This document shows, piece after piece, positions 1 through 59,299 of a stretch of DNA of 64,000 bases. The notes beneath the pieces were generated by a model, which made no database searches, had not been told where the DNA came from, and was given only the letters and a program-made list of their open reading frames with translations. Source of the DNA: Octopus sinensis (taxonomy: Eukaryota); the NCBI RefSeq assembly GCF_006345805.1, contig NC_043006.1:68386001-68450000 (forward strand), read 5' to 3'. Every line of letters starts with the position of its first letter. Positions within the stretch are counted from its first letter, which is position 1. The position numbers and the translations under genes were made by a program.

Positions 1-312
1 AGAATTGCAGAAACATGAAATAAACTACCCACATCAGCTGTTAGCTGTCGAGACACTTCATCCTCCAAAACTTCCATGTTTCCTGAAATTCACCAACAGT
101 ACATCTAATGCGCCCCCACCCACTTCTGTATTTTTTAAACAATTCATTGTTCACTTCCTGTGCATATTCTATGTACTGTTCATGCACTTTTGACTACTTT
201 TCCTGATGAGCTGTAGTACACCTGAGCACTGCATACGATAAGTTTATTATTATTATTATAAACAGTTGAAGATATTGAGAATAACAACACTAACAAAAAA
301 AGATATACTCAC

Positions 313-2026
313 AATTATTCACAGTTGCATTAATACTGGTGATATAGGATGGTTTTGTGGTAGGTTTAAAATCCTTTCCTTCTGATCGGGTGATACAGGG
401 ACCATCTGTGACGTAACACTCTGAAGAGCAATTGTTCATGCTTGGTGTGGAATCATAGCGTGAATATGTATCCAATAACTTCTTCTCTAATTGAACAGGT
501 GTTGTGTCCTGGTTTGGGGACACGGGAGTACTTAAACTTTTGGTCAGTGCTGCTTTATAGGTGGTTGTTCGTTCAGCAGGTGACTGTACTGGTGTACAGG
601 TGTAGGTTTTATAATTATCCTGTGATAGCAGTCTCTCTGTGGTGCGGTGTTGTTTATAGTTCAATGGGATTACAGGTGAGGGCAAACTCACTTCACTGGG
701 TTTGCTTTCAAACTGGGCAGCTCGAGTAGCAACACTTTCAAATTTAGTCCTAGAAGTAATTTTTTCTATTTCAGTTTTATACCTGTTGGAAGGTGAAAGA
801 GGCACAGAAGATGGAGACTGTGTGTCTCTTTTGGAGGAGACCACACAGATAGTCCGCACTGGTGTAACACCAATGCTGTTCTGGTTATTAAGGGTGTTAG
901 TGGTGGTAGTAATATTGTTACTACTACTGCTACCAACTGCACAAGGGGTAAACTCCATCTGTGATTTACGCTGAATAAGAACAGGTCTTTGGTTATATGA
1001 AACTGGAAGCACAGGGGCAGTGGAAGGAGCATTAAGGGATGTTTTATTTAAAACTGGTGTCCCACCCATTGTCTTGTAGATGACATGGCGGGACTGTGGG
1101 CTGGGTTCTTCTCGAGAATTGAGGGAGCGATTAAAAACACCATTAGAACTGTTTGAAGACTGATAAATAGAATGAGAGTTAGGTCGGTTCAGAGGAGATA
1201 TTTGTAAAGGAGGATGTACCACTGAAGCCACTGCTGAATGTATTGGGGTACTGTGGGTCGTAGTAGCTTTGCTAGCTTCCACAGTTGAACTGTGGTCATT
1301 AGTAAGAAAATCAGTCTTTGCAGACAGCCCAGGTGAGAAAGTATTTGCAAAGGAGGATAAAGATGAAGTGGTCTGAGAACGAGGTAACATTTTGTTCTCA
1401 GAAGAGATGGTACGTAATGTAGTTGAGAAGGTCTGCCGTGAATCCTTGGCATTGTACAATGGGCTTTGGAAATAGGACTCAGACCGACTGACATTCTCAA
1501 ATGATTCCCGTGATTGCAACACATTTTCACGAGATGTTCGCCTGCGACTGTTGCTGCCACTGCTTGACATATAGATATTATCAATACTATTAGATTTTTG
1601 CTGATCTTTCTTTGGTGGAAAATACAACCCAAAAGAGTATGAATCGATTTTTTGATCGGAAGTTTGAGCAGCACGTTGCTCAAACTCCCGCTTCCGATCC
1701 AAAAATGCAGCTTTATTCATGTTATCAGGTACAAGTGGCTCCCTCTGGAGGCTAATTCCTGATGAGAAAGATGTTGACGTCACTAGTGGAGATGGATTGA
1801 TTTCCTTGATGGTCGTTGTTGAGAAAATAGGATCAGAATGTTGATTCTCTCCAAATGTAAAGGAAACTTTTCTTTCTTTGACACGATCAGGGAGATAAAC
1901 AGTTGTTTCCTTCAGAGCAGACTGTGAATGAACGGCGGGTTTCACACTTATAACAGGAGTTGAGGTGGAGTGACTGCTTATAAACGTATCTGCTGATGTT
2001 TGGTTATAAGCAGTATTCTTATATGC
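313..2026 (-). CDS. ARHGAP21: Large coding exon of an ARHGAP21/23-like RhoGAP (Ser/Thr/Pro-rich linker after the PDZ domain)
   Basis: Lies within the 585-aa ORF 290..2047. The acceptor ...ttttcttcgtggccag|GCATAT opens at 2026 in phase 0 (AYKNTAY...), matching the ILQx|AYS junction of ARHGAP21/23. Strong donor AATT|gtgagtat at 313/312; 1714 nt, ends in phase 1. Orthology to ARHGAP21 versus ARHGAP23 cannot be resolved; probably the single invertebrate co-ortholog. Confidence 0.88.
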
Positions 2027-2324
2027 CTGGCCACGAAGAAAAATCAAAAATTAATTTCAGATAAGCATGGAGATTTATTTGAAGAAATTAAGAAAATATT
2101 TCGACATTAATTTTGTGTTTTAATTCTTTAGAATCAAAACTTAATTCTTGTTTTGCTCAATTTTTGCATCAATACATGATAAATGATTGAGGTTTTGGTG
2201 GTTTTGATATGCAAGTGGGGTTCATATTTAAGTTTATTTCAAACAGTAATGGAACAGAACAATCGATTCTTTGTAGTGAAGACTTAAGAACAAATGAATG
2301 AATATAAAATTAGATTTTTTGTGA

Positions 2325-3025
2325 GCGAGGAGAGAGAGAAGAGAGGAGAGGGAGAGATGGGGAGAGGAGAGAGAGGGAAGAGGAGAGTAAAGGGAGAGAT
2401 GGGGAGAGGAGAGAGAGAAGGGGAGAGGAGAGAGAGGAGAGAGAGAAGGGGAGAGGAGAGAGAGAAGGGGAGAGGAGAGAGAAGGGGAGAGGAGAGAGAA
2501 GGGGAGAGGAGAGAGAGAGAGGAGAGAGAGAAGGGGAGAGGAGAGGAGAGAGAGGAGAGAGAGAAGGGGAGAAAAGAGAGAGAAGGGGAGAAAAGAGAGA
2601 GAGAAGGGGAGAGAAGAGAGAGAAGGGGAGAGGAGAGAGATAGAGATGAGGAGAGAAGGGGAGAGGAGAGGGAGAGATGGGGAGAGGAGAGTAAAGGGAG
2701 AGATGGGGAGAGGAGAGAGAGATGGGGAGAGGAGAGAGAGAAGGGGAGAGGAGAGAGAGAAGGGGAGAGGAGAGAGAGAGAGAGGAGAGAGGAGAGAGAG
2801 GAGAGAGAGAAGGGGAGAGGAGAGAGAAGGGGAGAGGAGAGGAGAGAGAGAAGGGGAGAGGAGAGAGAGATGGGGAGAGGAGAGAGGAGAGAGAGAGGGG
2901 AGAGGAGAGGGAGAGAAGGGGAGAGGAGAGAGAGGAGAGAGAAAGAGAGAGAAGGGGAGAGGAGAGAGATAGAGATGAGGAGAGAAGGGGAGAGGAGAGA
3001 GAGGAGAGGGGAGGGGAGAGAAGGG

Positions 3026-3056
<31 letters not shown>

Positions 3057-3190
3057 AGAGAAAGAAAGGGAGAGAAGGGGAGAGGAGAGAGAAGGGGAGA
3101 GGAGAGTGAAAAGGTGAGAGAGAGAGAGAGAGAGAGGAGGGCAAAAGAGAGAGAGAAGAGGGGACAGAGAGAAGGGAAGGGAGAGAGAGG
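2325..3190. repeat. Polypurine (GA-rich) satellite of about 0.87 kb
   Basis: Almost pure G/A, built from variants of gagagaaggggagaggagag with occasional gatgggg. Source of the spurious E/R/G-rich and S/L/P-rich ORFs at 2284-3308. Confidence 0.97.
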
Positions 3191-3215
3191 TTGTTAAGTG
3201 AATGTCGTAACTTAC

Positions 3216-3270
3216 CATCTGCAGGATATCTTCATTTTTAGGGACAACAAGTAACTTGAGCGATGAATCA
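3216..3270 (-). CDS. ARHGAP21: Coding exon, end of PDZ domain (DSSLKLLVVPKNEDILQM)
   Basis: ttttctttcag|T GAT TCA...CAG ATG|gtaag; 55 nt, phase 2 to 0. The peptide matches the ARHGAP21 DTTLELSVMPKDEDILQ motif and joins both neighbouring exons in frame. Confidence 0.93.
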
Positions 3271-3866
3271 CTGAAAGAAAAAGGTTTAAATAGAGAGTTA
3301 AATGACAACTTTTGGAGACTGAGGATTCACTGTATGTTTAGGGTCCACTGTCAAGAACTCATTGTCCATTATGGGTTCATAGTTCATTTAAGGATTCATA
3401 CAAGGAGGACCTTTCTCCACCTTCAACTAACCTTTATTTCAGATGACCTCTGACCCCAATTATAGGTTGTATATGAAATAAGGACCTTGAAAATACAAAC
3501 TGGCTTCAGTTCTGTTGAGAACATGTATGGCATTAATGTCTTCAAGAAAGGCATGCATAACACCACACCTCCATTACACTTGCTCTAACAACAGAGTTTT
3601 GTTCTTCATTGAAAGAAACCAGTATTTTTTCATGTGATTAAGGTCAAATATTAGAAGAAATACATGAGTAGGAAGGATGGGTAATCTTAGTGTAGGATGA
3701 GTAGTTATAGTCCCTGGCAGGTAAAGAGGCTCTAGGAGATGAAGTAGAAGGAAAAATGGACATGAAAGAATAGAATGGTTAAGATGAGAGAGGGGAAGGG
3801 AGAGAGAGAGGAAGAAAGATAAAGAGATGACCAAGGTGGAGAGAAATGCAGACTAGCTGCAATATC

Positions 3867-4378
3867 GTGGAGGCGCAATGGCCCAGTGGTTAGGGCAGCG
3901 GACTCGCAGTCATAGGATCATGGTTTCAATTACCAGACCAGGCATTGTGAGTGTTTATTGAGCGAAAACACCTAAAGCAGCATGAGGCTCCGACAGAGGG
4001 TGGTGGTGAACCCTGCTGTACTCTTTCACCACAGCTTTCTCTCACTCTTCCTTCCTGTTTCTGTTGTACCTGTATTTCAAAGGGCCAGCCTTGTCACACT
4101 CTGTGTCACGCTGAATCTCCCCGACAACTACGTTAAGGGTACATGTGTCTGTGGAGTGTTCAGCCACTTGCATGTTAATAAATGAGCTGTGACATCAATG
4201 GTGCCAAGCTGTATCGGCCTTTGCCTTTCCCTTGGATAACATCGGTGGCATGGAGAGGGGAGGCAGGTATGCATGGGCAACTGCTGGTCTTCCATAAACA
4301 ACCTTGCCCAGACTTGTGCCTCGGTGGGTAACTTTCTAGGTGCAATCCCATGCTCATTCATAACCGAAGGTGGTCACA
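3867..4378 (+). mobile_element. tRNA-derived SINE (family B) with 12-bp target-site duplication
   Basis: A-box-like TGGCCCAGTGG at 3879-3889 and B-box-like GGTTTCAATTACC at 3922-3934. Flanking direct repeat AGCTGCAATATC at 3855-3866 and 4379-4390. Confidence 0.85.
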
Positions 4379-4508
4379 AGCTGCAATATCAGGTTACTAA
4401 GAAAGCAATCAGCAATTACCATTAAGAGGACTGATGAGGTTCTGACACCCACAAATTGATAGACTGTTGTTAGTAGTTTCTAAAATGAATGAAAAGCATC
4501 AACTTTAC

Positions 4509-4695
4509 CTGGACTGTATGAGAGAGATAACTTGAGAGTAAGTTTTTCCTGTAACAGGCTCTCCGTTGACGGAGACAATTCTGTCTCCAGTATTTAAACC
4601 AGCAAGTTCTGCAGGACTGTCTTCTTTCACATGCTTCACAAAAATAGTGTCCATCGGCTCCAAGTCACTAAGCTTGGTGCGTTTGTGTCGTCGTA
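4509..4695 (-). CDS. ARHGAP21: Coding exon, PDZ domain core ([61 protein letters not shown])
   Basis: ctcatttctttccag|TA...TCC AG|gtaaag; 187 nt, phase 1 to 2. [10 protein letters not shown]...[24 protein letters not shown] is diagnostic of the ARHGAP21/23 PDZ. Confidence 0.96.
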
Positions 4696-5324
4696 CTGGA
4701 AAGAAATGAGGAAATATATATAACAAAAGATCTGAAATGATGACGCAATCTTAATTACATTTTAATCATCATATTTTTAATGAAATACTATTTAGCCCCA
4801 GGTCAAGCCTGAATGAGGTGGTGGAATAGTGAAGTGCTCACAGAATACTGTATTTTTGGTATACATATCAGCATAACATGAAGTGTAAACATTCAGACAT
4901 AGTAATATCTTTTCAAATCCTGCTGCATTTCACACAAAATTTTTCGTTTTGACAATCATCCTGGTGTATAAGTCAACCTACCATTTTTGAGTGAAAAATT
5001 TTGGTTTTAAAAATTTTACTTGTATGTTAGAAAATACAATAAATTTAATTAAACAATACTAAAGTTGAATTGGGACCAAGTAGATATTGTTGGACAATGA
5101 TAAACTAAAGGCAAGGGAAATAATCCAAGACTGAAAAGAATTTGAATCGAGTTCCAATTTACTAAGATTGAAAATTGGTTGGTGAAAGTGGGAGAGAATG
5201 CAGGGTGGAAATGTTGTGTTCCTATGTTTTTTAACTTCATTAGGTAAATGGATAATATGGTAGGGAGAAATGATAGCGTTATGTTAAATAGATATAATGG
5301 TAACTCCTGTCATAAAATATGTTA

Positions 5325-26714: not shown

Positions 26715-26732
26715 CTATATATACATACATAT

Positions 26733-26889: not shown

Positions 26890-26947
<58 letters not shown>

Positions 26948-27815: not shown

Positions 27816-27896
27816 ACACACTTATACATATGTATACACAAACACATGCATGCACAGGAACACACATCATCTTTTTCTTGTTTGCATGAGTTAGAT

Positions 27897-28232: not shown

Positions 28233-28389
28233 GGTTAGATGGGGTTCATTGGAGCAGATTTTCTATAGCTGGATGCCCTTCATGATGCCAACCCTAACCA
28301 ATTTTCATGGAAGATTGGAAATGAACACTCCCACTTGTATGCCAGAGACACTTGTTTACAGACTGCCATTGCAATGTCAAGATGTATAT

Positions 28390-28990: not shown

Positions 28991-30310
28991 CTATACATAC
29001 ATATATATATACACATATATATCTGTGTGTGCGTGTTTATAAATATATATATATATATATATATATAGCCATCATTGTCTTTTATCATTATTATTGTTTT
29101 AATAACCACATTTCCATGTTTGCATGGGTTTGATGGAGTGTATAAAGGCACATCATCTATAGCCAGAAAAGATAAGTTTGAAGAGAACGATAGTGTTATA
29201 TATATATATATAATGCTGAATTAACTATTAAGCAAAATAAGTACATGCTTAGGACATCAAGGGAAAGTAGGGCACCACTGAAATGGTAAATGGTTTATGG
29301 CACAAAAGAAATCACTTTAAATTTGCTAAAATAATATTTGAAGTGGTTTGTATGATCAGAAATATAATTTCAAAGTGTTCATCGTGTCATAGTGAGGATC
29401 TCCTCAAAGATTTTGCAATAAAAAAACAAAAAGTTATGAGAAAACTTTTCAAATATAAATGAAGTGGAAGCACACAAAAATAAACATTATTTTCCATCTT
29501 ACTGTCAGTTTTATTTCATTTAAAAAAATATAAATCTATTCTATGGGTTAACATTGTTTATATTTTGAATTACATATATATCAGGGCACCAAAATCTTTG
29601 AAGTGCTAAGGGCCTCTAATAGGTCTTAATCTGACCCCGAATACATAAACATACATACTTGCATACATTTAAGGAAAAGAGATACAAATAAATGGATGGA
29701 TAGATAGATAGATATAGATAAACAGATATGGATATAGTGTGTTAAATATGGACAGAAAGACAGATATACATAGATAAGAGATAGATAGATGTAGATAGAT
29801 GTAGATAGATAGGGAAAGCCTGTGTAAAAGTAGAGTAGTTATCTTATCTAAGAAAACATCCTGCCAGTATTTTCAGCAATCTAACTCCCATTGCCATCTT
29901 ACTTTTCCACAAACCATCATCAGCATTATAATCTCCATCTCACTTTAATGTCAACCTAGGGATGGAGTGTGAGGTGAGTAATGATAAGTGAGGACTTTGG
30001 AGGGTGAGGATATAGAACTGAGGATACATGTGTGTGTGAACATCGAAGGAAATATTGATAAACTGCCAGAGAGTATGTGTGTGTCCTAATATTGTTGAAA
30101 TTGACTTAAACTCTACAATACAGCTCCTATTACCATCAACACTATGGCACCCATCCATATATCTTTATGGATATGTGGTAAAGAAGTTCAATTCAAAGCC
30201 ATGTGGTTCCAGATTTGATCCCACTGTGGGACATTTTGGACAACTGTGTTCTATCTACCATAGAGCCCTGAGCTGGGTAAAGCCTTAACGATTAGAATAC
30301 GATAACTGTG

Positions 30311-30344
<34 letters not shown>

Positions 30345-30349
<5 letters not shown>

Positions 30350-30725
30350 TCTTTTCTTTTACTTGTTTCAGACATTTGACTGCAGCCATGCATCTATTCC
30401 ATCTCAATCCTTTAGTCCCAGGATTTATTCTTTGTAAGCCTAGTGCTTATTCTATTGGTCTCTTTTGCCAAACCGCTAAGTTATGGGGACATAAATGCAC
30501 CTGCATTGGTTGTCAAACAATGGTGAGGGGGACAAACACACACACACACACACATATATACGATGGGCTTCTTTTCAGTTTCCGTCTACCAGATCCACTC
30601 ACAAAGCTTTGGTCAACCTGAGGCTATAGTAGAAGACACTTGCCCAAGGCGCCATGCAGTGGGACTGAACCCAGAACCAGGTGGTTGTTAAGCAAGCTAC
30701 TTACCATACAGCCACTCCTGTGCCT
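30345..30725 (-). mobile_element. SINE family A
   Basis: Family A body in reverse, ending cagccactcctgtgcct. Confidence 0.8.
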
Positions 30726-31779
30726 ACACATACACACATCATCATTGTTTAACGTCCGCTTTCCATGCTAGCATGGGTTGGGCGATTTTACTGAGGACTG
30801 GCGAACCAGATGGCTGCACCAGGCTCCAATCTGATCTGGCAGAGTTTCTACAGCTGGATGTACAAAATACTTTTATTTTGGTCAAGTTGGTCTCTTGCTT
30901 CTCTCAGGCAAGTTTATAAATGTGTGTGTGTGTGTTTGTGTGTGTAAACCTTGTGCAGAAAATGAAAAACTGGTGCTTTTAAAATGAAGCCTCTGGTGAC
31001 ATTTGTTCTGCACTTTGTTACAGGGATTCCCTTATCACTTACAGAGAGATTCCCTTATCAATTCAGTGAACCTTTGATTGATTTCTTGGAAACCAATAAA
31101 CCTATTTTCCTTTAATTGTAATATAGAATTTAAAAACAATACCAACTAAAGTTCATAACATTCTATCATTATTGTAATCCTAGAATCACCACTACCATAA
31201 CAACCAATACTACATGGAATCTCTTCTGTAATTTAATTACAGACTTGTAGTTATTACCATCACCACCATTATTATACATATAGAATTCCTCTCTTATGCT
31301 TTACATCTTCCCCACACTCTCTAAAGCTGTATGACCCCTCTCACATTTGCAGTGATGCTGCCCCCACTTCCAGTTTCCTCTACAGGTGGTTTCCCTCCCC
31401 CAACAATCATGAATAAAATGGGCAACCTTTCCATTATATCTTGCCTGTTGCTAAGCCTCAGTTCCCTTCAATCAACCTTTACTTTTAATCAAGTTCCTGA
31501 AAAGAAAAACAACAGCAACAAAGGAAAAAAAAAATCAAAATGTTTGATATGTCCATTTACTCAAACCAACACCCACAGGAAATTGATTAAGAATTAATTA
31601 ATGAAAATGTAAATAGAACAGTATAAGAAGTACCAATGTAAGGCAGGTAACTCATGGATACATGGTTCACAGTCCTACCAGTGGCAGAACTGTGGTTAAC
31701 AATCCCACCTTTTCATTTGCTAACATCTAATAATAACCAATTGCATTAACCATTACTACTACTATTATTACTATTATTA

Positions 31780-32330
31780 TTATTGAGTGAGAGAGCAATG
31801 CATGCCACCTAAGTGATACTGGGGTACAAATATATGAAGCCCATCATGACTACCCATCTGATAAGGGTACACCAGGCTCATGCATCACAACCATATCTGT
31901 GTGACATGGTGACCTCATATCAAGACAAATAGCGTATGACCTTACAGGTGAGCCTAGTTAGAATTTTCTTCAGGCAGAGTAGTCCATCCTGCAAAAAAGG
32001 TCCCGGAAAGAGGTTTGCTTAAGGATGTTGAATGAAACATTCATTTTTCCAGGGGTGAATTATTCAAACCCCAAAGAATCCCTCTCAATACATGGCTATG
32101 ATGCTTCCCAACTACTTCTGCTGGTAATCAGAGATGCACATATTGTCAGCCACTAAGGGACATGCTCAACTGGTTAAGGTCAAACAACGGACAAGAAATT
32201 CCATGGTATTGAGCAGAATATTTGCTGTAGCCCATCTGTTATACCAAGACAAAACAATGTACATGATAACACTTCCAATCAGTTAAGATCAAAAGCCATG
32301 GGAGCCACTGCCAGGTATGGCATCAATTCT
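31780..32330 (-). mobile_element. About 550-bp retroposon-like element with a (TAA)n tail; partial copy at 38225-38640 interrupted by a family C SINE
   Basis: Shared ttattcaaaccccaaagaat..ctctc...catggctatgatgct...agccactaagggacatg.tcaa.tggttaaggtcaa...gagcagaatatttgct; (att)n at the left end. Confidence 0.65.
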
Positions 32331-32584
32331 GAGCATACACCTGTGAAAAAATAAAAGAAGGGCTCTTGCCCTGTTGCTCTAGTACCTGTCGCTTTTGTGG
32401 GTTTTTCCACAAAGAACCTTAAAGCACCTCCTCCTATTGGGAGATTTGTATTGTTTAATTTTTTTATTGTTTTCTAATGTTTGTTTACATGCTGTAAAAT
32501 CCTTTCTATTGGCTTGTGTTGTCTTTTATGTTGCGTCATATCATTTTATGTTGTTTTATGTAAGCCCTTGTGGCTAGTAAAAGA

Positions 32585-32617
<33 letters not shown>

Positions 32618-32639
32618 CATCATCATCATCATTATTATC

Positions 32640-32880
32640 AAGGTGGCCAAACTGACAGAAGTGTTAAAGCAGTGAGCTGGCAGAAACGTTAGCATGCTGG
32701 GCGAAAGGCTTAGGAGTATTGAGGTTGACTTTGCCTTTCATCCTTTCGGGGTCGATAAATTAAGAACCAGTTACGCACTGGGGTAGATGTAATCGACTTA
32801 ATCACTTTGTCTGTCCTTGTTTGTCCCCTCTATGTTTAAAGCCCCTTCTGGGCAATGAAGAAATAAGAACTATTAGCAAA
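32640..32880 (+). mobile_element. SINE-like family C, well-preserved copy
   Basis: gagctggcagaaacgttagc...gaggttgactttgcctttcatcctttcggggtcgataaattaag...cactggg...aatcgacttaatc...gaaataag. Further copies at about 14915-15125, 38310-38548, 44115-44260, 46900-47080, 48180-48400, 54690-55110 and 59020-59150. Confidence 0.8.
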
Positions 32881-33558
32881 CTGGACAAAATACTACCAAG
32901 GTCAACTTTACCTTCCATCCTTTTTGTTGGGTACAGTGAAGGAGCGGGGTTGGGTGGTGCAGGGGGAAGGTGTAAGGACTGGAGTACCTCAGCAGAAAAG
33001 GGTGGTGGGGAGGGTGGTGTTAGAAGTATTAACAGACACAACTCTACTTTAAATTCTCCAGTAACACTAAATTCAGTCAAAAGTCACAAGACTGAACCAG
33101 AAACTTTTTATGTTTCCATTGCTGTAGTTTCTTTGAAGTGAACAGCTGAGTAAGAGAAGTCAGTCAAACAACAACAACAGCAGCAACAACAACATGAACC
33201 ATGCAAGTGTAGAAATGGATATTATGATGATGACGACGATGATGATTAAAATGACGACCATGGTGATTAAGATGATGATGATGATAATGATGATGTAGTT
33301 GAGTAAGAAAGTAGGCCAGAGAGAAGAAACTGAACATTTCTTGGGTCTGGAGATACTTGCTTATTATTTAATCAAGATTTTGTCTTGTTGACATTTGAGA
33401 ATACCCCCTCACCCCCTCTCTTGCCTCAGTGGTGTTGGGATGAGGGTGGCGATGCAGGGAGGGAGAATGGGGGGGGGGAGACGTTCTCTAATGGGTTTCA
33501 AATGCCATAAGTTAGAGAGTATGTGAGGATTAGGTGTGTGTGTGTGTGTGAGAGAGTA

Positions 33559-33604
<46 letters not shown>

Positions 33605-34988
33605 GGGGTTTGGTCAGGGTTATGAATGACTTAATATGCACTTTGAACAGATGTGTGTGTGATAAGCTAGACATGGGGGAGCCAACATAGAGAGTTCTGG
33701 TGAAGAGAAGATAGAACTCCTGGAGGATGGACCAACAGCACCAACACTGCCACCACCACCACCCTTTATAACTGCATGTTTTCTTATATTAAAGGCATTA
33801 GTTTTCTGCTGCCGTGCAGTTAACTAGGACTGACTCTTGTCACTGTTACAGAGTGAGGTAGGACGGGGGTGGTGGTAAGGGGGGGGGGCAAACATCCTCC
33901 CACCTCCTCTAATCCCCACTCGATGTATAAAATGTAGGTGAGGGTGGAGCGATAGCCACTCCCAACAGCTGATTGTAGAGTTGATGTTGTTGACTTACAT
34001 CAACAATCATGGAACTTGGTAGGGTTGGACATCTTGTTAAGGAGATAGAAAGATAGACTACACACACACACACTCACACACAACAAAGTATCTGGTGTAA
34101 ACTGAGGGTAGTCAATGAAAGGCCCCAAGAAGCAGGAGAGAATTCAATGGATAAGAATAGAATCCATTATTATGATGCTGGTGTTTAATGTTAGTATCTG
34201 TGGTTGTGATGATGATGATGATGATGATGATGTCCCATAATTCCTGGTGGTGAAGTAAACTTGGAACAGCAGATATCTTTGCTACACCATGTGTCATTGC
34301 TAATCTCATATCTTCAGTACAAGGCAGTTCAGAGTTTGAACAGACTACACACACACACACACACACTCTTTCTCTCTCCATACACAAACATCTGACAAGG
34401 GAACTCTCTTTTCTGATTACGCCAGCGTGTGCAAACACAAATTATGCATGTGATTAGATACACACACACACCCATATATATATATGTGTGCGCACGTGTG
34501 TGTGTGTGGTGTGTGCATGCATGTAAAACATAGCTGAAGAAAAAAGTATTTATGCATGTGTATATATGTATGTATGTTTGTGTGTGTGCGTGTGTATGTG
34601 TGGAGAGTTAAATTTCATTGGTTCTCTTCACAAATTCCGTTTGAATCTGTCAAGGTTGTTTGTGACAGTCAATATTGTGTTTAGTGATGTGACATTGTAA
34701 TAGGAGGTGGGCACAGTGATGTGGAGAGAGAAAGAGAGAGACTGAAAGAGGAGAGGGTGAGAGAAAGAGGAGGGAGAGAGAGAGAGAGAGAGACAAGGAG
34801 AGACAGTGGTAATGACAGCAAATAGAAAAGATTGATTTTTTTCTAAGTTCTAATAGAAAGAACTTCCTATTAGAGATAGAAATAGATGTCTGTTCGCGTA
34901 TATGTTTGTATGGGTCGATATGCATGTGTGTGTGTGTATATATATATATACATACAAACACACATGTATAGATTAATGTGTCTGTATG

Positions 34989-35036
<48 letters not shown>

Positions 35037-35390
35037 TGTATGTGAGTATATATATATATGTGTATGTGTATATACATATATATGCAGCAATGGTTAAGAT
35101 ATTTAGATTATAACCACAAGGTCTTGTGTGAAATTTTGAACAAATGTCATTTTCTCAAGCCATGGGTTGACCACCACCAAACCTTGTGAGTGAAATTGGG
35201 TAATGGAAACTGTATAGAAGCCTGTTTGCTGGATTGTCCCTGTAATCCAAAAAACTGAGTCATGCTAATTCTGCCTTGGAATTACATTAAGGGTGTGTGT
35301 GTCTGCCATCTACATGTTAATTTGAAAGCAGGTTATTAAGCTGATTAAACAACTGGATTGTCATGGTCAAACAACAGAGTATCACTGTAT

Positions 35391-35424
<34 letters not shown>

Positions 35425-35426
<2 letters not shown>

Positions 35427-35700
35427 GGCATGGGCATGGCTGAGTGGTAAGAAGTTTGCTTCCCAACCACATGGTTCTGGGTTCAGTTCCATTGCGTGAC
35501 ACTTTGGTCAGGCAAGTGTCTTCTACTGTAGCCTTGGGCTGACAAAAGCCTTGTGAGTGGATTTGGTAGATGGAAAGTGTTGTGTATATGTAGGCATGTG
35601 TGTGTGTCTTTGTTTCTCTCCCATTGTTGCTTGACAAATGGTGTTGGTGTGTTTATGTTCATGTAACTTCGAAGTTCTGCAAATGACGCAGGTAGAATAA
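35425..35700 (+). mobile_element. SINE family A, diverged and truncated
   Basis: ggcatggctgagtggtaagaagtttgcttcccaaccacatggttctgggttcagttcc... Confidence 0.7.
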
Positions 35701-37426
35701 ATACCTGACTCGATATCATCATCATTATCATCATCGTTTAACGTCTGCTTTCCATGCTAGCATGAGTTGGACGATTTGACTGAGGACTGGTGAACCTGAT
35801 GGCTGCACCAGGCTCCAATCCTGATCTGGCAGAGTTTCTACAGCTGGATGCCCTTCCTAATGCCAACCACGCCGAGAGTATAATATATATATATATATAT
35901 ATATACATACACATACACACATATATATATATATATATAAGTACTGGAAGCAATTCATTTGATCAAAAATTCTTCAAGGTAATGCCCCAGGATGGCAGTC
36001 TAATGACTGAAACAAGTAAAATATAAAAGATACATATATATAATGTGTTTCTCTGTGTGTGTGTGTGTGTGTTGTGTGCTACCATGATATTTAATAAATG
36101 TTTAATTTGCTAAATGGAATATTCCTTCAATATAGGAATAAAATACATTTCCTGTCATTAACTTTCTGGTAAATTCCTTAAGTTTCACAATATTCGTTTT
36201 ACATCCAAAATATATTTGCTTGGCCAGAATTTTCTGCTTTATTGCTTCTTATGGCTGTGTTGAGATTTGTTGATTTGACAGGTCAGCAATGTCTTGTCAT
36301 TCCTCTCCCTACTACAGTTGGTTTACTAAATATAGACATCAGAACAGATACACTATCAGCTGAGGATCTCCATCCACACACAACTGGCTTTACCTAACAT
36401 TTTAAGGGGTGGCTACAGAAATAAGAGGACAGAATTCACATAGATAAACCATCGTTGTTGGATATATCTTAAATCTTTAGCTGGGAGTGGATATAAAGTG
36501 GGTGTATGAATAACATAATTCTAATGTGTTCTGCATCTGGTATAGTAAATCCCTTGAAAGAAAACACTTAGTTCCATTTTCATATAATGAAGTGAATGAG
36601 AGATAAAACTTTGTTGAGATAATATGCTAGTCTCTCACAGGTAACATTCCCAGATGATTTGACATCTATTTCTAACAGTGATATGAACCGAGGTTTGCTC
36701 TGAACAGTCTCAAGATACCTCTTCATTACACATAACATCAAAGGTATTTCTATGCAGTCACCCTGCCTGCTAGAAATGACTGCCAAATTTCTCACACATC
36801 ACACGCTTGTAGCTTAAAAAATAAAGGACCCATTTGATAATCTAGTCCTTGAATATATCGAATAATAACAGGGTCCCAGCTAGAGCACTTTTGATCAAAG
36901 AACTGGTCAATCAGAGCTCAATAGTGGGTAATGCTGTAGGGCCCTACCCATCAGCTCTTATCTACATCCTCTAAGTGTTTGCTACATCTCAATCTCTGGT
37001 GATTAAGAATAATCACATATAACCAAAGCTGCACCACAGATGGTATATTTTCAGAAACCCCCTCAGTCGAAATAGTCGATGGTATTCCACAAGATGCAAC
37101 ACACTTTAATTACCCCCCACACACACAATACCACTCACATATCTGGATAGAGTAGCTGTTACACACACACATTACAGGCTATATATATCATCATCATTTT
37201 AACATTCATTTTTCCATGCTCACACAGGTTGGACAGACTTTGTGAGGCAGATTTCCTAAGGCCAGATGCCCTTCCTGTCACCAACACTCACCTGTTTCCA
37301 AGCAAAGTAATATTTCCCCATAATGGAGAGATTGGGAACAAAGGACATTGTTTGCATGACAGTGACTTTGTTACAACCTCCACATGATGTCAAGGCAAGG
37401 TGACAGTTTAAAACACATACACACAC

Positions 37427-37470
<44 letters not shown>

Positions 37471-39383
37471 AGCTTCTTTTGGCTAGTGTGTTTTCAAATC
37501 TGTTCACAAGACTTTGGTTGGTACTCAGAGCTATAGCAGAAGATGCTTGCCTTAAGCACCACACAGTGGGATTGAATCTGGAGATATCATCAGAAAGCAG
37601 ACTTCAAACTACGCACCCATACCTACACACACACACATTTGTGTGTGTGCACAAGAGTGTGTGTGTGTGTGATTGCAAACTTTACACACTTCAACATACT
37701 GTGTTCTTCAGTTGTCTCTTCTGTTATCACTGGAATAATCTTTCGTTGTCAAAGCCAACAAGTTGTGTCCCACCGCTACAAAAGCCCTTATACCTGCACA
37801 TTTTCCCCATATCCTACTGACTAGAACTGAAACAAATTGGACCCTGTCTTCTGTTCACATGTCCCCCACACACATTATACTGAACTGCAACAGCATAACC
37901 TAGCCTTTATGAATGGTAAGTTAAAAAAACCTTCAGGTAGACATTATACACCTTCCTTGAACCACATAAAATGAAATACTTATAGTAAGATATGAACCCA
38001 CAAATCAGGACTTGGATACTGATAGCTTCACTGCATCTACTAACACATTCTGCCACTATAACAGAGATAACGGGGATAACCATATAATTACTGGTATGCC
38101 CTGTAGTGAAGGAGTTAGTGTTATAGCATTCGCAAATTTTGTCTTTGAGTAGCAACTGTTATTTCCTATTTGCTTGCCCCTAGAAAATTTGAAAAGTGGC
38201 TAATATTTCCTTCAAACTTTGCTTTTGTTACATTTATTCAAACCCCAAAGAATTCCTCTCAGCACATGGCTATGATGCTACCCCCAATACTTCTGCCCAT
38301 GAACTGAGATACATATATTTATTTCTTTACTACCCACAAGGGGCCAAACACAGAGGTAACAAACAAGGACAGACAAAGGAATTAAGTCGATTACATCGAC
38401 CCTAGTGCGTAACTGGTACTTAATTTATCGACCCCCGAAAGGATGAAAGGCAAAGTCGACCTTGGTGGAATTTGAACTCGGAACGCAACAACAGACGAAA
38501 TATGGCTACGCATTTCGCCTGGCATGCTAACGTTTCTGCCAGCTCGATTGTTAGCCACTAAGGGACATGTTCAAGTGGTTAAGGTCAAGCAACTGACAAA
38601 CAGTTCAGTGGTACTGAGCAGAATATTTGCTATAATGATATTTCTGCTTCAGCAACTCAGCACTGAATCTGTCTGAAATGTAATGGGAAATAGGTCAGTT
38701 TCAAAACATTGATGTCCAGGTCACAAAAGCAAAGTTTGAAGGGAATAGTAGTCATTTCCTTTGATTTCCAGATAGAAACAAATAGGAAATAATACTTACT
38801 GACCAAAGACAAAACAAATAAACATTTTGTTACACAATGTAATTACTGTGAGATTTTCTAATGAAGAAATATTATCACACCAATAAATTAAACATATCCC
38901 TTCACATCATTAGGTGTGACTCTCAATATAGGGATTATTTAAGGAGCCAACCATGAGACCCCTGTACACACTGAATAACAAATGTTAACTTAATCCCTAA
39001 CATTCCAGAATAATCTGGGGGTTCCACCCACAACTTGCCCCCAGAAAGAGTTTAATCAGCCATGAACAACAGCAACAACAAGGATAAACGAAGATTAACA
39101 AGGATTAAATTATCCTTTAAGGGATGTTGAAAGTGAGAAATTAATCTTTTCATAGACAAGTACTACAATTAGAGCAGTGGGAGTAGTGTTGGTGGTAGTG
39201 CAATAACAATGGTGGTGGTGCAGAGGTGAAGGTGTGATAGTGGTGGTGTTTTGATACAGTAGTAGTAGTTGCAGTAGTGGTGGTGGTCTGTGCACGTACA
39301 AACAGTATGCAAATTTATCTAGTATATAAACACACATCACCCTTGGAGACATTCATTCAATATACACACATATCACCTGGAAT

Positions 39384-39420
<37 letters not shown>

Positions 39421-39953
39421 AGCTAAAGAGGAAGCTTGTATGTGGTCACTCAAATTTGCTAGACATATTGGACAAACTTCTGTCAAATCATACTATGCTG
39501 TTTAAAAAAATGAAAAGAACACTGGATAATGTAGTCTTGAGATAAAATGAGAAGAAAGATGAAATGGTCATGGCTGGAAGTTTTTTGTCTGTATGTTTGG
39601 TGGATGAAGACTAAGATGGCCTAAACTAGGAAACACACAAAAACTTATTTCAGGTTACAAACTGTAGCTGAAACCAAGTGTGATTAGTAGAAAATATCAG
39701 AGAAAGGAGAGAGAGACATGTAAGAAGAAACAACAACAGGATATATATTGTAACACCAGGGTATATAATAAAGGGTAGCAGTCATTAAGACAGACACACC
39801 CAAAATAGAGTCTAAAACTGGTTTTACAACAATCAACGGTCTCATTTCAGGACAAAATTTTCAAATGTACTGCACCATGTAATAATTGTTTTACAATTCA
39901 ACATTCTTTTCTGTTGCAGACAAGCAGCTTTATATGTTATGTGGATGTATGCA

Positions 39954-39987
<34 letters not shown>

Positions 39988-40096
39988 ATTAATAATATCA
40001 GGGTAATAAAGATTTAAAATTTTTTTATTACAAGTGGCCTAGCTTGTAGAAAAATTAGTCAATAGACAATATATTATAATAACTTTATATATAGGC

Positions 40097-40131
<35 letters not shown>

Positions 40132-40283
40132 TAACAAACGTCTTTCAGTTTCTAACAGCAAAATTCACTCACAAGCCCAAGGCTTTGGTAGAAGAGTAGA
40201 AGACACGAAGTGCCAAGCAGAGGAACTGAACCCAAAACCACACAGTTGGGAAGCAAATTTCTTAGCACAGAGTCATGCTGGCA

Positions 40284-40320
<37 letters not shown>

Positions 40321-47120: not shown

Positions 47121-47460
47121 CTAGTCTCTGAACAGTTTCCAGGAGGTCAATGTTCTGAGCAATATAGGTTTCCAGACTGGTGATGCAAATTCCAAGTGTG
47201 GCCACACCATAGCCATATACAGCCTTAAATAAATAGCTGGAGAGCAGCTGACAAAGGTCTTGCTGACTGATGCCAAGACACCCTCAGCCTTCTTGACAAT
47301 TTTAGAGATGTGCTTTGTCCAGTGTAAATCGCTGCTGGCAGTAATGCCCCGGTCACGTTCACAAGAAGACCTCTTGATATTTAGTTTATAGTTGACAGCT
47401 TCTGCAGTCATGCTCCACTTTCACTGGCCCACCACTGTTCACCTGTTTAAGTATCTTCAT
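47121..47460 (-). mobile_element. CR1/L2-type LINE remnant (RT C-terminus)
   Basis: ORF 47121..47411: ERDRGI..SSDLHWTKHISKIVKKA...LY.AMV.PHLEFASPVW matches the CR1/Jockey-group ERDLG...L.W..HI...KA...LY..LVRPHLEYA..VW signature. Confidence 0.8.
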
Positions 47461-48846: not shown

Positions 48847-49196
48847 CTGTAAATAAGGCTTGAACACTTTGTTTACTTTAGTGTTCACTGTTGTTTAACC
48901 CAAGGTCAGCTCTGTTTGAACAGACCAATAATTAAAGGTATTCCAGTTATGATATGAAGGAGATGTTCTAGCAGGCTAAGCCACAAGCCAAAGCTGGTCT
49001 AATAGGCAAGTGAATACACACTAACACTCAGTCATACACACACATTAATGTGGCTATAGACACATGTGGTTAAACACATGTAGCTATATATGTGGCTATA
49101 CATGCAATAGTATAACTTAGATACAGTTATATAAGTTATCTGCATAACCACATAACTAAATTCTTATATAAGTTATCTGCATAACCACATAACTAA

Positions 49197-50046
49197 ATTT
49201 TACTAAATTCTTTGTTATATCTAAAATTATTGAGAGAAACAGAGCGTCTCAAAATAAATACAGTAACAAAAGCATTAAACATTCACTCTGACACTGCCTG
49301 CAGGCATAGTGTAATTGATAAAGGCACTGGTGAATGCAGTGCAGTCACTTAGAGGTACTGAGTTCAATCCCAGGCAAAACACCTGAAGAAGGCTTTAGCA
49401 TACACAGCCAAAACATAGTGAAAAGCAACAACCAAGATGAAGACACCAGTCCAACTAATGCATTGTAGGAAGTGACTTGAGGGGCATTAGCTGTTATATC
49501 TAGTATGGATAGTAAAGTAGTCTCTGATGGCATTCTTCACTGTTCTATGTTTAGCCTTTACTACTTAGTACTGGTCACGGCTATAAGGAGAGGTACCCCT
49601 CACTGTGTGCAATATCTGCATAACCACATATTGCACACAGTGAGGGGTACCTCTCCTTATAGCCGTGACCAGTACTAAGTAGTAAAGGCTAAACATAGAA
49701 CAGTGAAGAATGCCATCAGAGACTACTTTACTATCCATACTAGATATAACAGCTAATGCCCCTCAAGTCACTTCCTACAATGCATTAGTTGGACTGGTGT
49801 CTTCATCTTGGTTGTTGCTTTTCACTATGTTTTGGCTGTGTATGCTAAAGCCTTCTTCAGGTGTTTTGCCTGGGATTGAACTCAGTACCTCTAAGTGACT
49901 GCACTGCATTCACCAGTGCCTTTATCAATTACACTATGCCTGCAGGCAGTGTCAGAGTGAATGTTTAATGCTTTTGTAACTGTATTTATTTTGAGATGCT
50001 CTGTTTCTCTCAATAATTTTAGATATAACAAAGAATTTAGTAAAAT
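49197..50046. repeat. Near-perfect inverted repeat (palindrome): 419-bp arms, 12-nt spacer
   Basis: Arms 49197-49615 and 49628-50046 are reverse complements (mirror ORFs 49345..49533 minus and 49710..49898 plus are identical). I saw two mismatches, both in the distal part. Spacer CTGCATAACCAC. Confidence 0.97.
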
Positions 50047-50191
50047 AACTTAGTTATCATTAAGCTAGTTTTAGGAACATAATTTATGACTAAGGTTTGG
50101 TGGAAGATTTTAATTCAGAACTTTTGAAAACAAGACATTTGTACTACAGAGCCAGAGCCAGTTTCAGCCGGGTTGGTAACGAAAGGGTTAA
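49965..50191. mobile_element. Second family of piggyBac-like TTAA MITE
   Basis: Right end GTAACGAAAGGG-TTAA; degenerate left end TTAA-TGCTTTTGTAAC. Confidence 0.65.
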
Positions 50192-50550
50192 GGCTTATAA
50201 ACTCAATACCAATTAGAAATTATAATTCTATATTTTTGAGACAAGGAATTTTATATGTAATGTAACGTAGTAAAAGCAACAATCAAGATGAGGACACCAC
50301 TTCAGTTAATACAGAATGTAAAAATTCCTCGTCTCTGAAATATAGAATTGGATCATTTCCTATTGTTTCAGAAAAGAGGACAGTTTGGATAATGTAGCCT
50401 GAGATATGCTGTTAAGAAGGGATGGTGATGGTCAAAGCATCTTTGATCATCAGTTTGCACAATCAGGATGTATCTGGAACTAAACAACATCTATAACAAC
50501 ATGCCATTGTCTATACCAGCTGCCTTCTTTATGTAGATTTGGGAAAAATA

Positions 50551-57290: not shown

Positions 57291-59299
57291 AGTCCTTAAG
57301 TAGGAGCAAGTATGGTATATGGAGGGAAGTTTTTTTTTTGGGGGGGGGGGTTCTGTCTAGTTGCTTGGCTACCATAATCATTTGGTGGTGGAGACAGTGG
57401 GTATAAGGATGGTGGGGTTTTGACAGTGATATTCTGGATAATGTGAATGCACAAAAGTCAAAGACACAGCCAGAAGCTTCTCCATTCCTTGACTGAAATC
57501 AGTTCAAGCTGGAGTGACATGTCTGGCCAAGCTGGAGCTGTCTGTCCAACCAAGTCAAAATAATGACTACTTAAGAATGGAGAGAGTCACAGACATCCAG
57601 AGGAGACAGATCATATAAAGAGGTAACAATCTGTATCCTAAAACTGCATGCTTCACTCATTGGAATATTGTTACAAGAAGGTTTAAAGTTCAAACCTGGC
57701 CATTAGCACATCAGTATTTGTTGTTTAATCCCAGGTGAGCACTGATTAAGCACACCTATGATCATAGGCATTCTAGCCATGACCATCATGTTGCAGTTTA
57801 TTCAGATATACTCTACATCTACATCACATCCAATGTGTCAGTCTATCATTAAAGAGAGTAGTGTGTGATCCAAGGGAGATTTCACTGCTATTCTTAGCAG
57901 ATTCAGTGACCATACATAGCAGCTCCCTCATTGTTGGTTGATGTTACATGTCTTTATGTAAGGCATATATTCGTCTCTCTCCTTCTCAATGACGACAATG
58001 ATAAATATACCTACTACAAGGTTCGGTGTACTGTTATGGAGAGGAAAAGGGATCAGTTAGATGAGAAACCCTGATTTAGATGTAAATAGAAACATTTGTA
58101 GAACTCTCACACCTATGTAAAACTCATTTAAAAAACATAACATATCCCTTAAATTGACCCCTTTGCAACATCAATGAAACTGACCCCTATGAAACATCAA
58201 ATATTTAATAAAGGAGTACAGAAACTGACCCTTTCTGTGACATCCACTATTCATCAAAGGGATACTGGATCTGACCCACCCCACCTTCTGTAATCTAGGA
58301 AGAAAGTTCAAATCTAAACTATATACAACATTGACTTGTGATCTTATCACACACGCATACAGAAAGAGAACACCTGTTTACAAGCATACACAGGGAAAGG
58401 AGGTCCAGCTTAACACATGGTACACACACACTAAATCAAGCACACTGCCATACACTTTGATGTATATATATACACACACACACACTCTGTGACTAATACA
58501 TTCCATAAACTTCCACAGCCAACAGTCAGGGTATCTGGATCCTCAGCCAGGGTTTATTATAAAAGAACATCATGAATGCAATAGCAACATTATTATTATT
58601 ATTATTATAGCCAATGAGGGTTATCCGAGGCGTGGTTATTGCTAGTTGAAAATTATTATTATTATTATTATTATTATTAGTAGTAGTAGTAGTAGTAATA
58701 ATTTCTGATTGAGGCACACAAGCCACAGTACTTGGCTGGTACAGTATTTCAGCTACATTCCTACCACCACCCCGGGAAAGATGAAAGGCATGTCAATAGG
58801 GTGGGAATACACAGGATACCTGTAGTTAATTTAAATGTAATACTAGTCAAGAGTTTCATGTGAAATAGCAGGTGAAGGGGAGTAGAAGGGTGAATGTTTG
58901 AAAGGATTGGGAAAATGGAAAAAAGTGTCGGGTTCTTTTCTCTTACTAATTTCTTCACATCCCATGTACTGAAGCAGGATATATAAACTGTGTCTCACTC
59001 CCATACATATATAGATTTCACATTTTGGCACAAGGCCAGCAATTTTGGGAGACGGGCTACTTTGATTACATTGAACCCAGTCAGCAATTGGTACTTATTT
59101 TATCGAATGATGGAAGACAAAGCTGATCTCGGAGGAATTTGAACTAAATCCTCTGGTTAGAACAACTGGTGCATTCCTCATATTCCTCCCGCCCACCCAT
59201 CTGCTGTTATAAGAACAGCATCTTGCTTTAGACCAATAAAAAAAAAATTGCCAATGTTGGTTAAACCCCCACCATCATCACCAGCCCAAAAAACTGTAT

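What the first reader, a model, noticed from the sequence alone, without database searches (positions are those of the whole stretch)
49127..50046. 850-bp near-perfect intronic palindrome whose loop copies an adjacent tandem repeat
Seen: arms 49197-49615 and 49628-50046 (419 bp, two mismatches seen) surround a 12-nt spacer. The spacer plus flanks (TATCTGCATAACCACATA, 49613-49630) is identical to part of a 36-bp unit tandemly duplicated just outside the left arm (49127-49162 and 49164-49199, period 37). The right arm runs on into a TTAA MITE (49965-50191), while the left arm holds only an inverted partial copy of it. So the right arm is the original and the left arm the derived copy. Inference: a double template switch during replication or repair (fold-back, FoSTeS or polymerase-theta-type templated insertion) created it recently. 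Established: near-perfect palindromes with such a short spacer are unstable and rare. Because this one is intronic, the pre-mRNA would fold into about 420 bp of dsRNA, an ideal ADAR or Dicer substrate; coleoids are known for extensive A-to-I editing. On the transcript it ends about 350 nt upstream of the candidate micro-exon acceptor at 48846, so it could influence splicing.
Basis: partly seen in the sequence, partly recalled or inferred. Interest (0 to 1): 0.72.

Follow-up and report, generated by a model that had tools for sequence, protein, structure and literature searches.

The report
Young 850-bp palindrome made by fold-back copying
A stretch of about 430 bases, probably inside a giant intron of an ARHGAP21/23-like gene, was recently copied backwards next to itself by a DNA copying slip, leaving a real, near-perfect 850-base hairpin-forming palindrome of an already known kind, with no evidence yet that it does anything.

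Summary
The 18-mer TATCTGCATAACCACATA occurs three times, twice in a perfect 36-nt tandem pair (period 37) beside the left arm and once as the loop. Nothing else in the 64-kb window comes close.

An ancestral sequence with only the right arm regenerates the observed 1,061 nt through one fold-back with two switches, each at a 3-nt microhomology (ATA, TAT). The only differences left are two substitutions and the tandem/indel scar at the left arm's outer end. That scar looks templated, which suggests an extra abortive round of copying. I therefore support a recent microhomology-mediated fold-back or template switch with the right arm as the original.

- The "TTAA MITE" has non-significant terminal repeats and no other copy.
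- The micro-exon is 22 nt and would shift the reading frame.
- ADAR, Dicer and splicing effects cannot be tested here.

An intronic position is plausible: a minus-strand ARHGAP21/23-like gene has its upstream PDZ exon missing from the window. The organism was not identified. This is a new example of a known kind, of modest interest.

The parts
49127..49162 (+). Tandem unit 1, TTATATAAGTTATCTGCATAACCACATAACTAAATT. It contains the 18-mer at 49137-49154.
49163..49163 (+). Single C between the two units. With its neighbours it forms ACTAAATTCTT (49155-49165), identical to 49202-49212 inside the left arm, so it looks templated rather than a random filler base.
49164..49199 (+). Tandem unit 2, 100% identical to unit 1. 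It contains the 18-mer at 49174-49191, and its last 11 nt (49189-49199, ATAACTAAATT) are already homologous to the outer end of the right arm.
49197..49618 (.). Left arm, inferred to be the derived inverted copy. It differs from the right arm at 49246 (G, part of a CpG) and 49265 (A).
49613..49630 (+). Third copy of the 18-mer TATCTGCATAACCACATA. It forms the loop (unpaired core 49619-49624) plus the innermost pairs TAT/ATA.
49625..50046 (.). Right arm, inferred to be the original. It continues into the right flank without any junction scar.
50047..50057 (.). Extension of the right-arm homology (AACTTAGTTAT). It matches 49189-49196 apart from a 3-nt indel, and its terminal TAT is the inferred first switch point.
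50264..50313 (+). Context only: a 51-nt motif 82% identical to 49412-49462 in the arm. It is the only other similarity to the arm in the window and hints at an old interspersed repeat inside the arm.
290..4697 (-). Context only: three exons of an ARHGAP21/23-like gene with canonical splice sites. They are 4511-4697 (second half of the PDZ domain), about 3219-3275, and the large exon 290-2047. The exon for the first half of the PDZ domain was not found in 4.7-64 kb.

Best explanation
This is a real, evolutionarily recent, local inverted duplication. The ancestral sequence was left flank, then TTATATAAGT, then TATCTGCATAACCACATA, then the right arm, then the right flank.

During replication or break repair, a growing 3' end that had just copied the 18-mer came off its template. 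It folded back through the tiny inverted match TAT/ATA at the two ends of the 18-mer. It then copied about 430 nt of the adjacent sequence in reverse-complement orientation. Finally it re-annealed through a second 3-nt match (TAT of ...TTAGTTAT with ATA at the end of the 18-mer), 18 nt behind its departure point.

This one event creates the left arm, turns the 18-mer into the hairpin loop, and leaves a second direct copy of the 18-mer outside the left arm. The outer junction then went through at least one more short round of copy-and-slip, or a later 37-nt tandem duplication. That produced the two 36-nt units and the 3-nt indel.

Shown here: the anatomy, and the fact that the two-switch model regenerates the sequence. 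Inferred: the polarity, the type of enzyme, the timing, and the intronic location. No function is demonstrated. If the region is transcribed as part of the minus-strand ARHGAP21/23-like pre-mRNA, the RNA would form a stem of about 420 bp, the kind of substrate that ADARs hyper-edit.
For: - The anatomy is confirmed.
- The reconstruction 'flank + a + u + revcomp(right arm, minus 3 nt) + u + right arm + flank' matches the observed 1,061 nt. The exceptions are the tandem/indel block at 49160-49196 and two substitutions.
- Both switch points carry 3-nt microhomology, read directly from the sequence.
- All scars lie at the left arm's outer end, and the right arm runs into its flank without a scar.
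- The only base that breaks the tandem repeat (C at 49163) recreates an 11-mer of the arm, as expected from repeated templated synthesis.
- All three arm differences (the indel and two substitutions) lie within about 70 nt of the outer end, where the switched synthesis would have started. By my arithmetic, two substitutions both falling in the outer 69 of 419 nt has P of about 0.03.
- No other copy of the arm exists in the window or in 21.5 kb from a related species. No clean target-site duplication flanks the structure. Both points argue against a transposon.
- The palindrome sits inside 49 kb and 14 kb of non-palindromic sequence, and its loop is local genomic sequence. Both points argue against a fold-back read artefact.
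- Published mechanisms of the same form exist. They include fold-back priming at short inverted microhomology with capture of the unwound product at 0-5 bp microhomology (PMC11724301), template switching that builds whole hairpins in one event (PMC5453318, PMC10710096), and leading/lagging strand switching at short inverted repeats (PMC10766183).
Against: - There is no outgroup or population data, so the single-arm ancestor is hypothetical.
- A 3-nt microhomology is weak evidence on its own.
- The copied tract of about 430 nt is longer than the documented short events. Yeast fold-back insertions run from 2 to about 150 bp (PMC11724301), and the primate template switches in PMC5453318 and PMC10710096 are described as short events.
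- In the four-point notation the return point lies behind the departure point (order 4-1-3-2). That class was not observed in human/chimp data (PMC5453318).
- The tandem pair and the indel require extra steps.
- Reads were not available, so an artefact is not formally excluded.
Confidence: 0.7

Rival explanations
1. Assembly or library artefact: a chimeric fold-back molecule or read (polymerase strand switching in vitro, or a read that runs from one strand into the other) was built into the consensus.
For: Near-perfect palindromes are a known artefact class. No reads could be examined. The species is absent from every searchable collection, so no independent assembly could be checked.
Against: - The palindrome is small and internal, with 49 kb and 14 kb of unique, non-palindromic flanks. 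A single fold-back read gives one turnaround at a molecule end, not two precise switches.
- From my own knowledge, the loop is not an adapter. It is a local 18-mer.
- The arms differ by two substitutions, one of them a CpG/TpG difference typical of in-vivo decay, and by a 3-nt indel.
- The outer junction carries a complex scar typical of repair.
Confidence: 0.1
2. Mobile element: either a foldback-type or MITE-like transposon with terminal inverted repeats of about 420 bp, or two copies of one young element inserted tail to tail.
For: - Long terminal inverted repeats with sub-terminal tandem repeats occur in foldback elements (my own knowledge).
- A 9-mer, ATAACTTAG, occurs at 49112 and 50045.
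- By eye, the arm contains a B-box-like GAGTTCAATCC and shares a 51-nt motif with 50264-50313, so part of it may be an old SINE-like repeat.
- The 18-mer flanks the left arm on both sides, like a target-site duplication.
Against: - No second copy of the arm was found in 64 kb or in 21.5 kb of a relative.
- The tandem units lie on one side only, so the ends are not symmetrical.
- The 9-mer overlaps the arm end rather than flanking it.
- ARAGORN, even with relaxed thresholds, and Rfam find no tRNA-like element.
- Two independent insertions abutting to the base, at 99.5% identity including flank-like sequence, would be a large coincidence.
Confidence: 0.1
3. A hairpin RNA gene maintained by selection: a precursor of endogenous siRNAs or of a miRNA-like RNA, or a dedicated ADAR target, with arm identity kept by selection or gene conversion rather than by youth.
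For: - The predicted stem is continuous, at -827 kcal/mol.
- Generic sub-threshold matches to miRNA hairpin models occur at the centre.
- Template-switch hairpins in introns have become miRNA genes in primates (PMC10710096).
- Long, nearly perfect dsRNA is where hyper-editing concentrates, and octopus is exceptionally rich in it (PMC5625713).
Against: - All Rfam matches are far below their gathering scores and match both strands equally, which is what any perfect hairpin gives.
- There is no conservation evidence. The only relative found shares exons only.
- The arms show no compensatory changes, only unpaired mismatches.
- The junction scars point to a fresh mutational event.
Confidence: 0.07
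4. Same mechanism with the opposite polarity: the left arm is the original and the right arm is the copy.
For: A palindrome is symmetrical by nature. The MITE argument for polarity failed. The CpG state at 49246 is retained in the left arm.
Against: - This needs three switches, including an 18-nt copy taken from 440 nt upstream, rather than two (reasoning).
- All scars sit at the left arm's outer end, while the junction of the right arm with its flank is clean.
- The CpG/TpG difference only shows which copy mutated later.
Confidence: 0.12

Closest known systems
Fold-back (snap-back) templated inverted insertions at DNA breaks, and MMBIR/FoSTeS-type template switching (PMC11724301, PMC10766183)
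   Same: Synthesis is primed at a very short inverted microhomology next to a 3' end. Adjacent sequence is copied in inverted orientation. The product is unwound and captured at 0-5 bp microhomology. Further rounds of switching can follow. The spacer of the micro-inverted repeat becomes the loop.
   Different: The copied tract is about 430 nt, against 2 to about 150 bp in the yeast assay. An 18-nt direct duplication of the loop sequence accompanies it. The enzymes and the cell context are unknown.
Template-switch mutations of the four-point model, which create hairpins and de novo miRNAs (PMC5453318, PMC10710096)
   Same: One event creates a perfectly paired hairpin from neighbouring sequence. 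Such events are enriched in introns, where the hairpin is transcribed with its host gene.
   Different: The event is much longer than those described as short. The switch-point order 4-1-3-2 (return behind departure) was not observed in the human/chimp or human/human comparisons. No ancestral sequence is available here.
Human palindromic AT-rich repeats (PATRR11, PATRR22, PATRR17) and experimental Alu palindromes in yeast (PMC1851657, PMC4940405, PMC8053094)
   Same: These are near-perfect palindromes several hundred bp long with almost no spacer. Such sequences are expected to form hairpins or cruciforms and to be fragile. In yeast the critical spacer length is about 8 nt, and the loop here is 6-12 nt.
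   Different: The arms here are 39% GC, the same as the surrounding sequence, so they are not AT-rich. No evidence of breakage or rearrangement exists for this locus.
Inverted repeat pairs in pre-mRNAs that are hyper-edited by ADARs (PMC5625713)
   Same: An intramolecular, long, nearly perfect dsRNA would form inside a transcript.
   Different: Those duplexes usually form between two separate copies of an interspersed repeat, tens to thousands of nt apart. Here the two halves come from a local duplication and are 99.5% identical with a 6-12-nt loop. Editing was not tested.

Membership tests
Microhomology-mediated fold-back / template-switch inverted duplication | The new sequence is a reverse-complement copy of immediately adjacent sequence. 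| tested here: met
   The arms are 422 nt and 99% complementary, 6 nt apart.
Microhomology-mediated fold-back / template-switch inverted duplication | The whole structure can be derived from a simpler ancestor by two switches with microhomology at the junctions. | tested here: met
   The reconstruction reproduces the observed 1,061 nt except for the tandem/indel block and 2 substitutions, with ATA and TAT at the junctions. The ancestor itself is hypothetical.
Microhomology-mediated fold-back / template-switch inverted duplication | An ancestral or alternative allele without the inverted copy exists. | not testable with these tools
   The species is absent from the collections. The only relative found shares exons only.
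Four-point-model short template-switch mutation | The switch-point order is one of the observed classes, in which point 4 is not before point 1. | tested here: not met
   The inferred order is 4-1-3-2, because the 18-mer is duplicated directly. PMC5453318 reports that this class was not observed.
Polymerase-theta-type templated insertion (TMEJ/SD-MMEJ) | The inserts are short, copied from flanking DNA, and often show repeated abortive rounds of copying. | tested here: inconclusive
   Repeated templating is suggested by the 11-mer ACTAAATTCTT at 49155 and 49202. However, a 430-nt insert is far longer than, from my own knowledge, such inserts usually are.
Foldback transposon / MITE | Target-site duplications directly flank the inverted termini. 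| tested here: not met
   No direct repeat abuts both arm ends. The 9-mer ATAACTTAG (49112, 50045) overlaps the right arm end and lies 77 nt outside the left arm.
Foldback transposon / MITE | Multiple dispersed copies exist. | tested here: inconclusive
   None was found in the 64-kb window or in L001. The genome itself could not be searched.
   The terminal repeats match at 12 of 16 positions, a score reached by 12% of shuffles. No other copy was found.
tRNA-derived SINE inside the arm | A tRNA-like head is recognisable by tRNA models. | tested here: not met
   ARAGORN, default and relaxed, finds nothing. Rfam finds no tRNA match at E<=10. The resemblance to a B box is visual only.
PATRR-type palindrome | The arms are strongly AT-rich. 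| tested here: not met
   Arm GC is 0.39, equal to the background.
miRNA or hairpin-RNA gene | A match to a curated family, or evidence of small RNAs. | tested here: not met
   The best Rfam scores are 49 bits against gathering scores of 64-92, and they are symmetrical on both strands. Small-RNA data are not available.
Fold-back assembly artefact | The palindrome sits at a contig or read end, has identical arms, and has no loop or an adapter as its loop. | tested here: not met
   The palindrome is internal, has unique flanks, shows 3 differences plus an indel, and has a loop copied from local sequence.

The most novel reading that the evidence does not exclude
The fold-back created, in one step, a newborn intronic hairpin-RNA locus. 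When the host ARHGAP21/23-like gene is transcribed, the 420-bp duplex would be hyper-edited by ADAR or diced into endogenous siRNAs. It could also stall splicing of the giant intron. That would make it a natural, datable example of a mutational event giving birth to a dsRNA regulatory element in an animal lineage with heavy RNA editing.

A further speculative variant is that the template for the inverted copy was the nascent intron RNA itself, in RNA-templated repair, rather than DNA.
Probability: 0.1. Interest if true: 0.55.

Novelty: new member of a known kind. Interest (0 to 1): 0.3.

Why it matters
This is a clean natural example of a long (about 430 nt) microhomology-mediated fold-back duplication, and its junction details are still legible. 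These include a loop that is the spacer of a 3-nt inverted repeat, an 18-nt direct duplication, and signs of repeated templating. Events of this size fall between the short template switches studied in primates and yeast and the kilobase-scale inverted duplications studied in disease.

If the locus is polymorphic in the species, it would allow three tests: fragility of a short-spacer palindrome in an animal germ line, hyper-editing or siRNA production from a new dsRNA, and any effect on the host gene. On present evidence it is a single neutral-looking mutation, not a new system.

Tried and rejected
- **Organism and orthologous locus.** They returned one unnamed relative (P0001, ENA ERZ21867824) and unnamed or distant PDZ fragments. 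The relative's contig L001 shares only the three exons, so it cannot serve as an outgroup.
- **Metagenome scan.** A scan with the 28-nt conserved motif of the arm found nothing.
- **tRNA-derived SINE in the arm.** This is not supported by ARAGORN at any threshold or by Rfam.
- **MITE claim.** Rejected as unsupported.
- **miRNA hits.** The Rfam hits at the centre are generic hairpin matches below threshold on both strands.
- **Upstream PDZ exon.** A 'TLRHF' hit at 24209 is not an exon.
- **Other mechanisms considered and set aside.**
  - ODIRA-type inverted triplication: there is no third copy.
  - LINE twin priming or retroposition with an 18-bp target-site duplication: this would not place an identical copy base-to-base next to its source, and there is no tail.
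  - Hairpin-capped break followed by dicentric formation: the structure is interstitial with both flanks intact.

Full report
**1. The observation**

- The repeat finder reports arms 49197-49618 and 49625-50046, 422 nt, 99% complementary, 6 nt apart.
- A base-by-base comparison finds three mismatches: 49246/49997, 49265/49978 and 49616/49627.
- A gapped alignment extends the homology to 49189 and 50057 across a 3-nt indel: ATAACTAA-ATTTTAC on the left against ATAACTAAGTTATTTTAC on the reverse complement of the right.
- The 36-nt unit TTATATAAGTTATCTGCATAACCACATAACTAAATT is present twice without a mismatch, at 49127-49162 and 49164-49199. The period is 37, and a single C at 49163 separates the copies.
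- The 18-mer TATCTGCATAACCACATA occurs exactly three times, at 49137, 49174 and 49613. There are no further matches even at 3 mismatches. Shuffles gave a mean of 0.14 matches, and none of 100 shuffles reached three.
- No other inverted repeat in the window comes near this one. The next best is 204 nt at 79%, an ordinary pair of old interspersed repeats.

**2. What the arms are made of**

The arm has 39% GC, the same as its surroundings.

Apart from its partner, the only similarity to the arm in the window is a 51-nt stretch (49412-49462) that is 82% identical to 50264-50313. That second site is the centre of a weak 156-nt self-complementary element.

By eye, the arm has a B-box-like GAGTTCAATCC and a layout like a tRNA-derived SINE head. 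ARAGORN at default and relaxed thresholds, and Rfam at E<=10, do not support this. I record it only as a lead.

The proposed terminal repeats match at 12 of 16 positions, a score reached by 12% of shuffles. There is no other copy in the window.

**3. Context**

The minus strand carries an ARHGAP21/23-like gene.
- One exon (about 4511-4697) encodes ...[52 protein letters not shown].
- The next exon (about 3219-3275) encodes DSSLKLLVVPKNEDILQ.
- Both have canonical acceptor and donor sites. Both match PDZ fragments that sources name Rho GTPase-activating protein 21 or 23.
- A 585-codon open exon follows at 290-2047.

The PDZ exon begins at an acceptor, so an upstream exon encoding the first half of the domain must exist. 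A search found no such exon between 4.7 and 64 kb. The simplest reading is a giant intron that runs past the end of the window and contains the palindrome. This is inferred, not shown.

The organism was not identified. The only close relative is an unnamed ENA contig with 48% protein identity in the large exon, and only its exons are alignable.

**4. Mechanism**

I took as the ancestor: left flank, then a (TTATATAAGT), then u (the 18-mer), then R (49631-50057), then the right flank. I then built the product of one fold-back: flank, a, u, reverse complement of R without its first 3 nt, u, R, flank. This product matches the observed 1,061 nt except for the block at 49160-49196 (the second tandem unit and the indel) and the two substitutions.

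Both junctions have 3 nt of microhomology.
- The end of u (ATA) overlaps the start of the inverted copy (ATAACTAA...).
- The inverted copy ends ...GTGTGCAA. The template would continue TAT, which is also the start of u.

In strand terms, a 3' end that had just copied u folded back on the TAT/ATA pair that brackets u. It copied about 430 nt, unwound, and re-annealed 18 nt behind its departure point. This explains three things at once: why the loop equals the sequence just outside the left arm, why that sequence is duplicated in direct orientation, and why the innermost three pairs of the stem belong to the 18-mer.

A model with the left arm as the original needs a third switch. It also puts the scars on the wrong side.

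The outer junction is more complex than a simple tandem duplication. The C at 49163 is the only base that interrupts the tandem pair. Together with its neighbours it spells ACTAAATTCTT, identical to 49202-49212 in the arm. This is what a short abortive round of copying, followed by a return to a, would leave. A plain 37-nt duplication would instead need a specific T-to-C change at exactly that base.

The indel and both substitutions lie within about 70 nt of the outer end, which is where the switched synthesis would have begun. The numbers are small, so this is only suggestive. One substitution is a CpG (left arm) against TpG/CpA (right arm), which looks like ordinary decay after the event.

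**5. Comparison with known processes**

- **Yeast fold-back insertions.** One break end folds back at a short inverted microhomology and is extended. The product is then unwound and captured by the other end at 0-5 bp of microhomology. Tracts run from 2 to about 150 bp (PMC11724301).
- **Four-point model.** This model shows that single template-switch events create complete hairpins in primate genomes (PMC5453318). Some of these, mainly in introns, have become miRNA genes (PMC10710096).
- **Larger events.** Switching between leading and lagging strands at short inverted repeats underlies larger inverted amplifications (PMC10766183).

The present event has the same form but is longer. In four-point notation it is 4-1-3-2, a class not observed in the human data. 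I therefore file it as a fold-back or template-switch duplication in the broad sense, not as a typical short template-switch mutation. I cannot tell a replication-fork process from break repair, or say which polymerase acted.

**6. Rivals**

- **Read or assembly artefact.** This is unlikely. The palindrome is internal and has long unique flanks. It needs two precise switches. Its loop is local sequence. Its arms differ, and its outer junction has a repair-like scar. Only reads can exclude an artefact.
- **Transposon.** This is unlikely. There is no second copy in 64 kb plus 21.5 kb, the ends are asymmetrical, and no target-site duplication abuts the arms. The genome itself could not be searched.
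- **Selected hairpin-RNA gene.** Nothing supports this beyond the fold itself. The Rfam miRNA matches at the centre score 49 bits or less, against gathering scores of 64-92, and appear equally on both strands.

**7. Consequences**

Folded as RNA, the minus strand of 49100-50100 forms one continuous stem at -827 kcal/mol.

Long, nearly perfect dsRNA is where ADAR hyper-editing concentrates across animals. Octopus has an exceptionally high fraction of such loci (PMC5625713). That makes editing of this hairpin plausible if the organism is a cephalopod, but it also makes the locus less unusual.

In yeast, palindromes with spacers up to about 8 nt are the most fragile (PMC8053094). The loop here is 6-12 nt, so some instability is expected.

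At 22 nt it would shift the reading frame between the two halves of the PDZ domain. A role in regulated coding-exon inclusion is therefore unlikely.

**8. Verdict**

The mechanistic inference is largely right, although one of its supporting arguments (the MITE) fails. The functional ideas are untested. This is a well-preserved example of a known mutational process and is of modest interest. It would become more interesting if it proves polymorphic or expressed as dsRNA.

Noticed in passing
window 290-4697 (minus strand): There are three exons of an ARHGAP21/23-like gene with canonical splice sites: the second half of the PDZ domain at about 4511-4697, about 3219-3275, and a 585-codon Ser/Thr-rich exon at 290-2047. 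The exon for the first half of the PDZ domain is not in the window, which implies an intron longer than 59 kb.
   Followed up: partly
window 58601-58724 (+): A U4 spliceosomal snRNA copy scores 61.4 bits against a gathering score of 46. It lies on the strand opposite the host gene, and it is unknown whether it is a gene or a pseudogene.
   Followed up: no
window 2284-3308: A purine-rich (GA-type) low-complexity tract lies in the intron between the large exon and the PDZ exons. It creates long spurious ORFs on both strands and a GC skew of 0.64.
   Followed up: no
window 47121-47411 (minus strand): A 96-codon ORF resembles the C-terminal part of a non-LTR retrotransposon reverse transcriptase. 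Its only database relative is a 78%-identical unnamed fragment, and it has no Pfam hit.
   Followed up: partly
window 50210-50365: A weak 156-nt self-complementary element (67%, with inner arms 50224-50252 and 50321-50349 at 90%) has a centre that is 82% identical to 49412-49462 of the palindrome arm. This may be an old repeat family shared by both.
   Followed up: partly
Its length is not a multiple of 3, and one frame contains TGA, so inclusion would disrupt the PDZ reading frame.
   Followed up: partly
window 49048-49104: Short tandem repeats of ATGTGGCTATA type lie just left of the structure. One copy, ATGTGGTTA at 49064, is the reverse complement of 9 nt of the loop 18-mer. This fits the 18-mer being native to the left flank.
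   Followed up: no
window 49295-49306 and 49937-49948: A perfect 12-nt palindrome, TGCCTGCAGGCA, sits inside each arm.
   Followed up: no
window 26356-40289: Several copies of interspersed repeats lie in both orientations at 75-92% identity, for example 26733-26879 against 30573-30719 at 92%. These are ordinary dispersed repeats and serve as a yardstick for how exceptional the 99% palindrome is.
   Followed up: no
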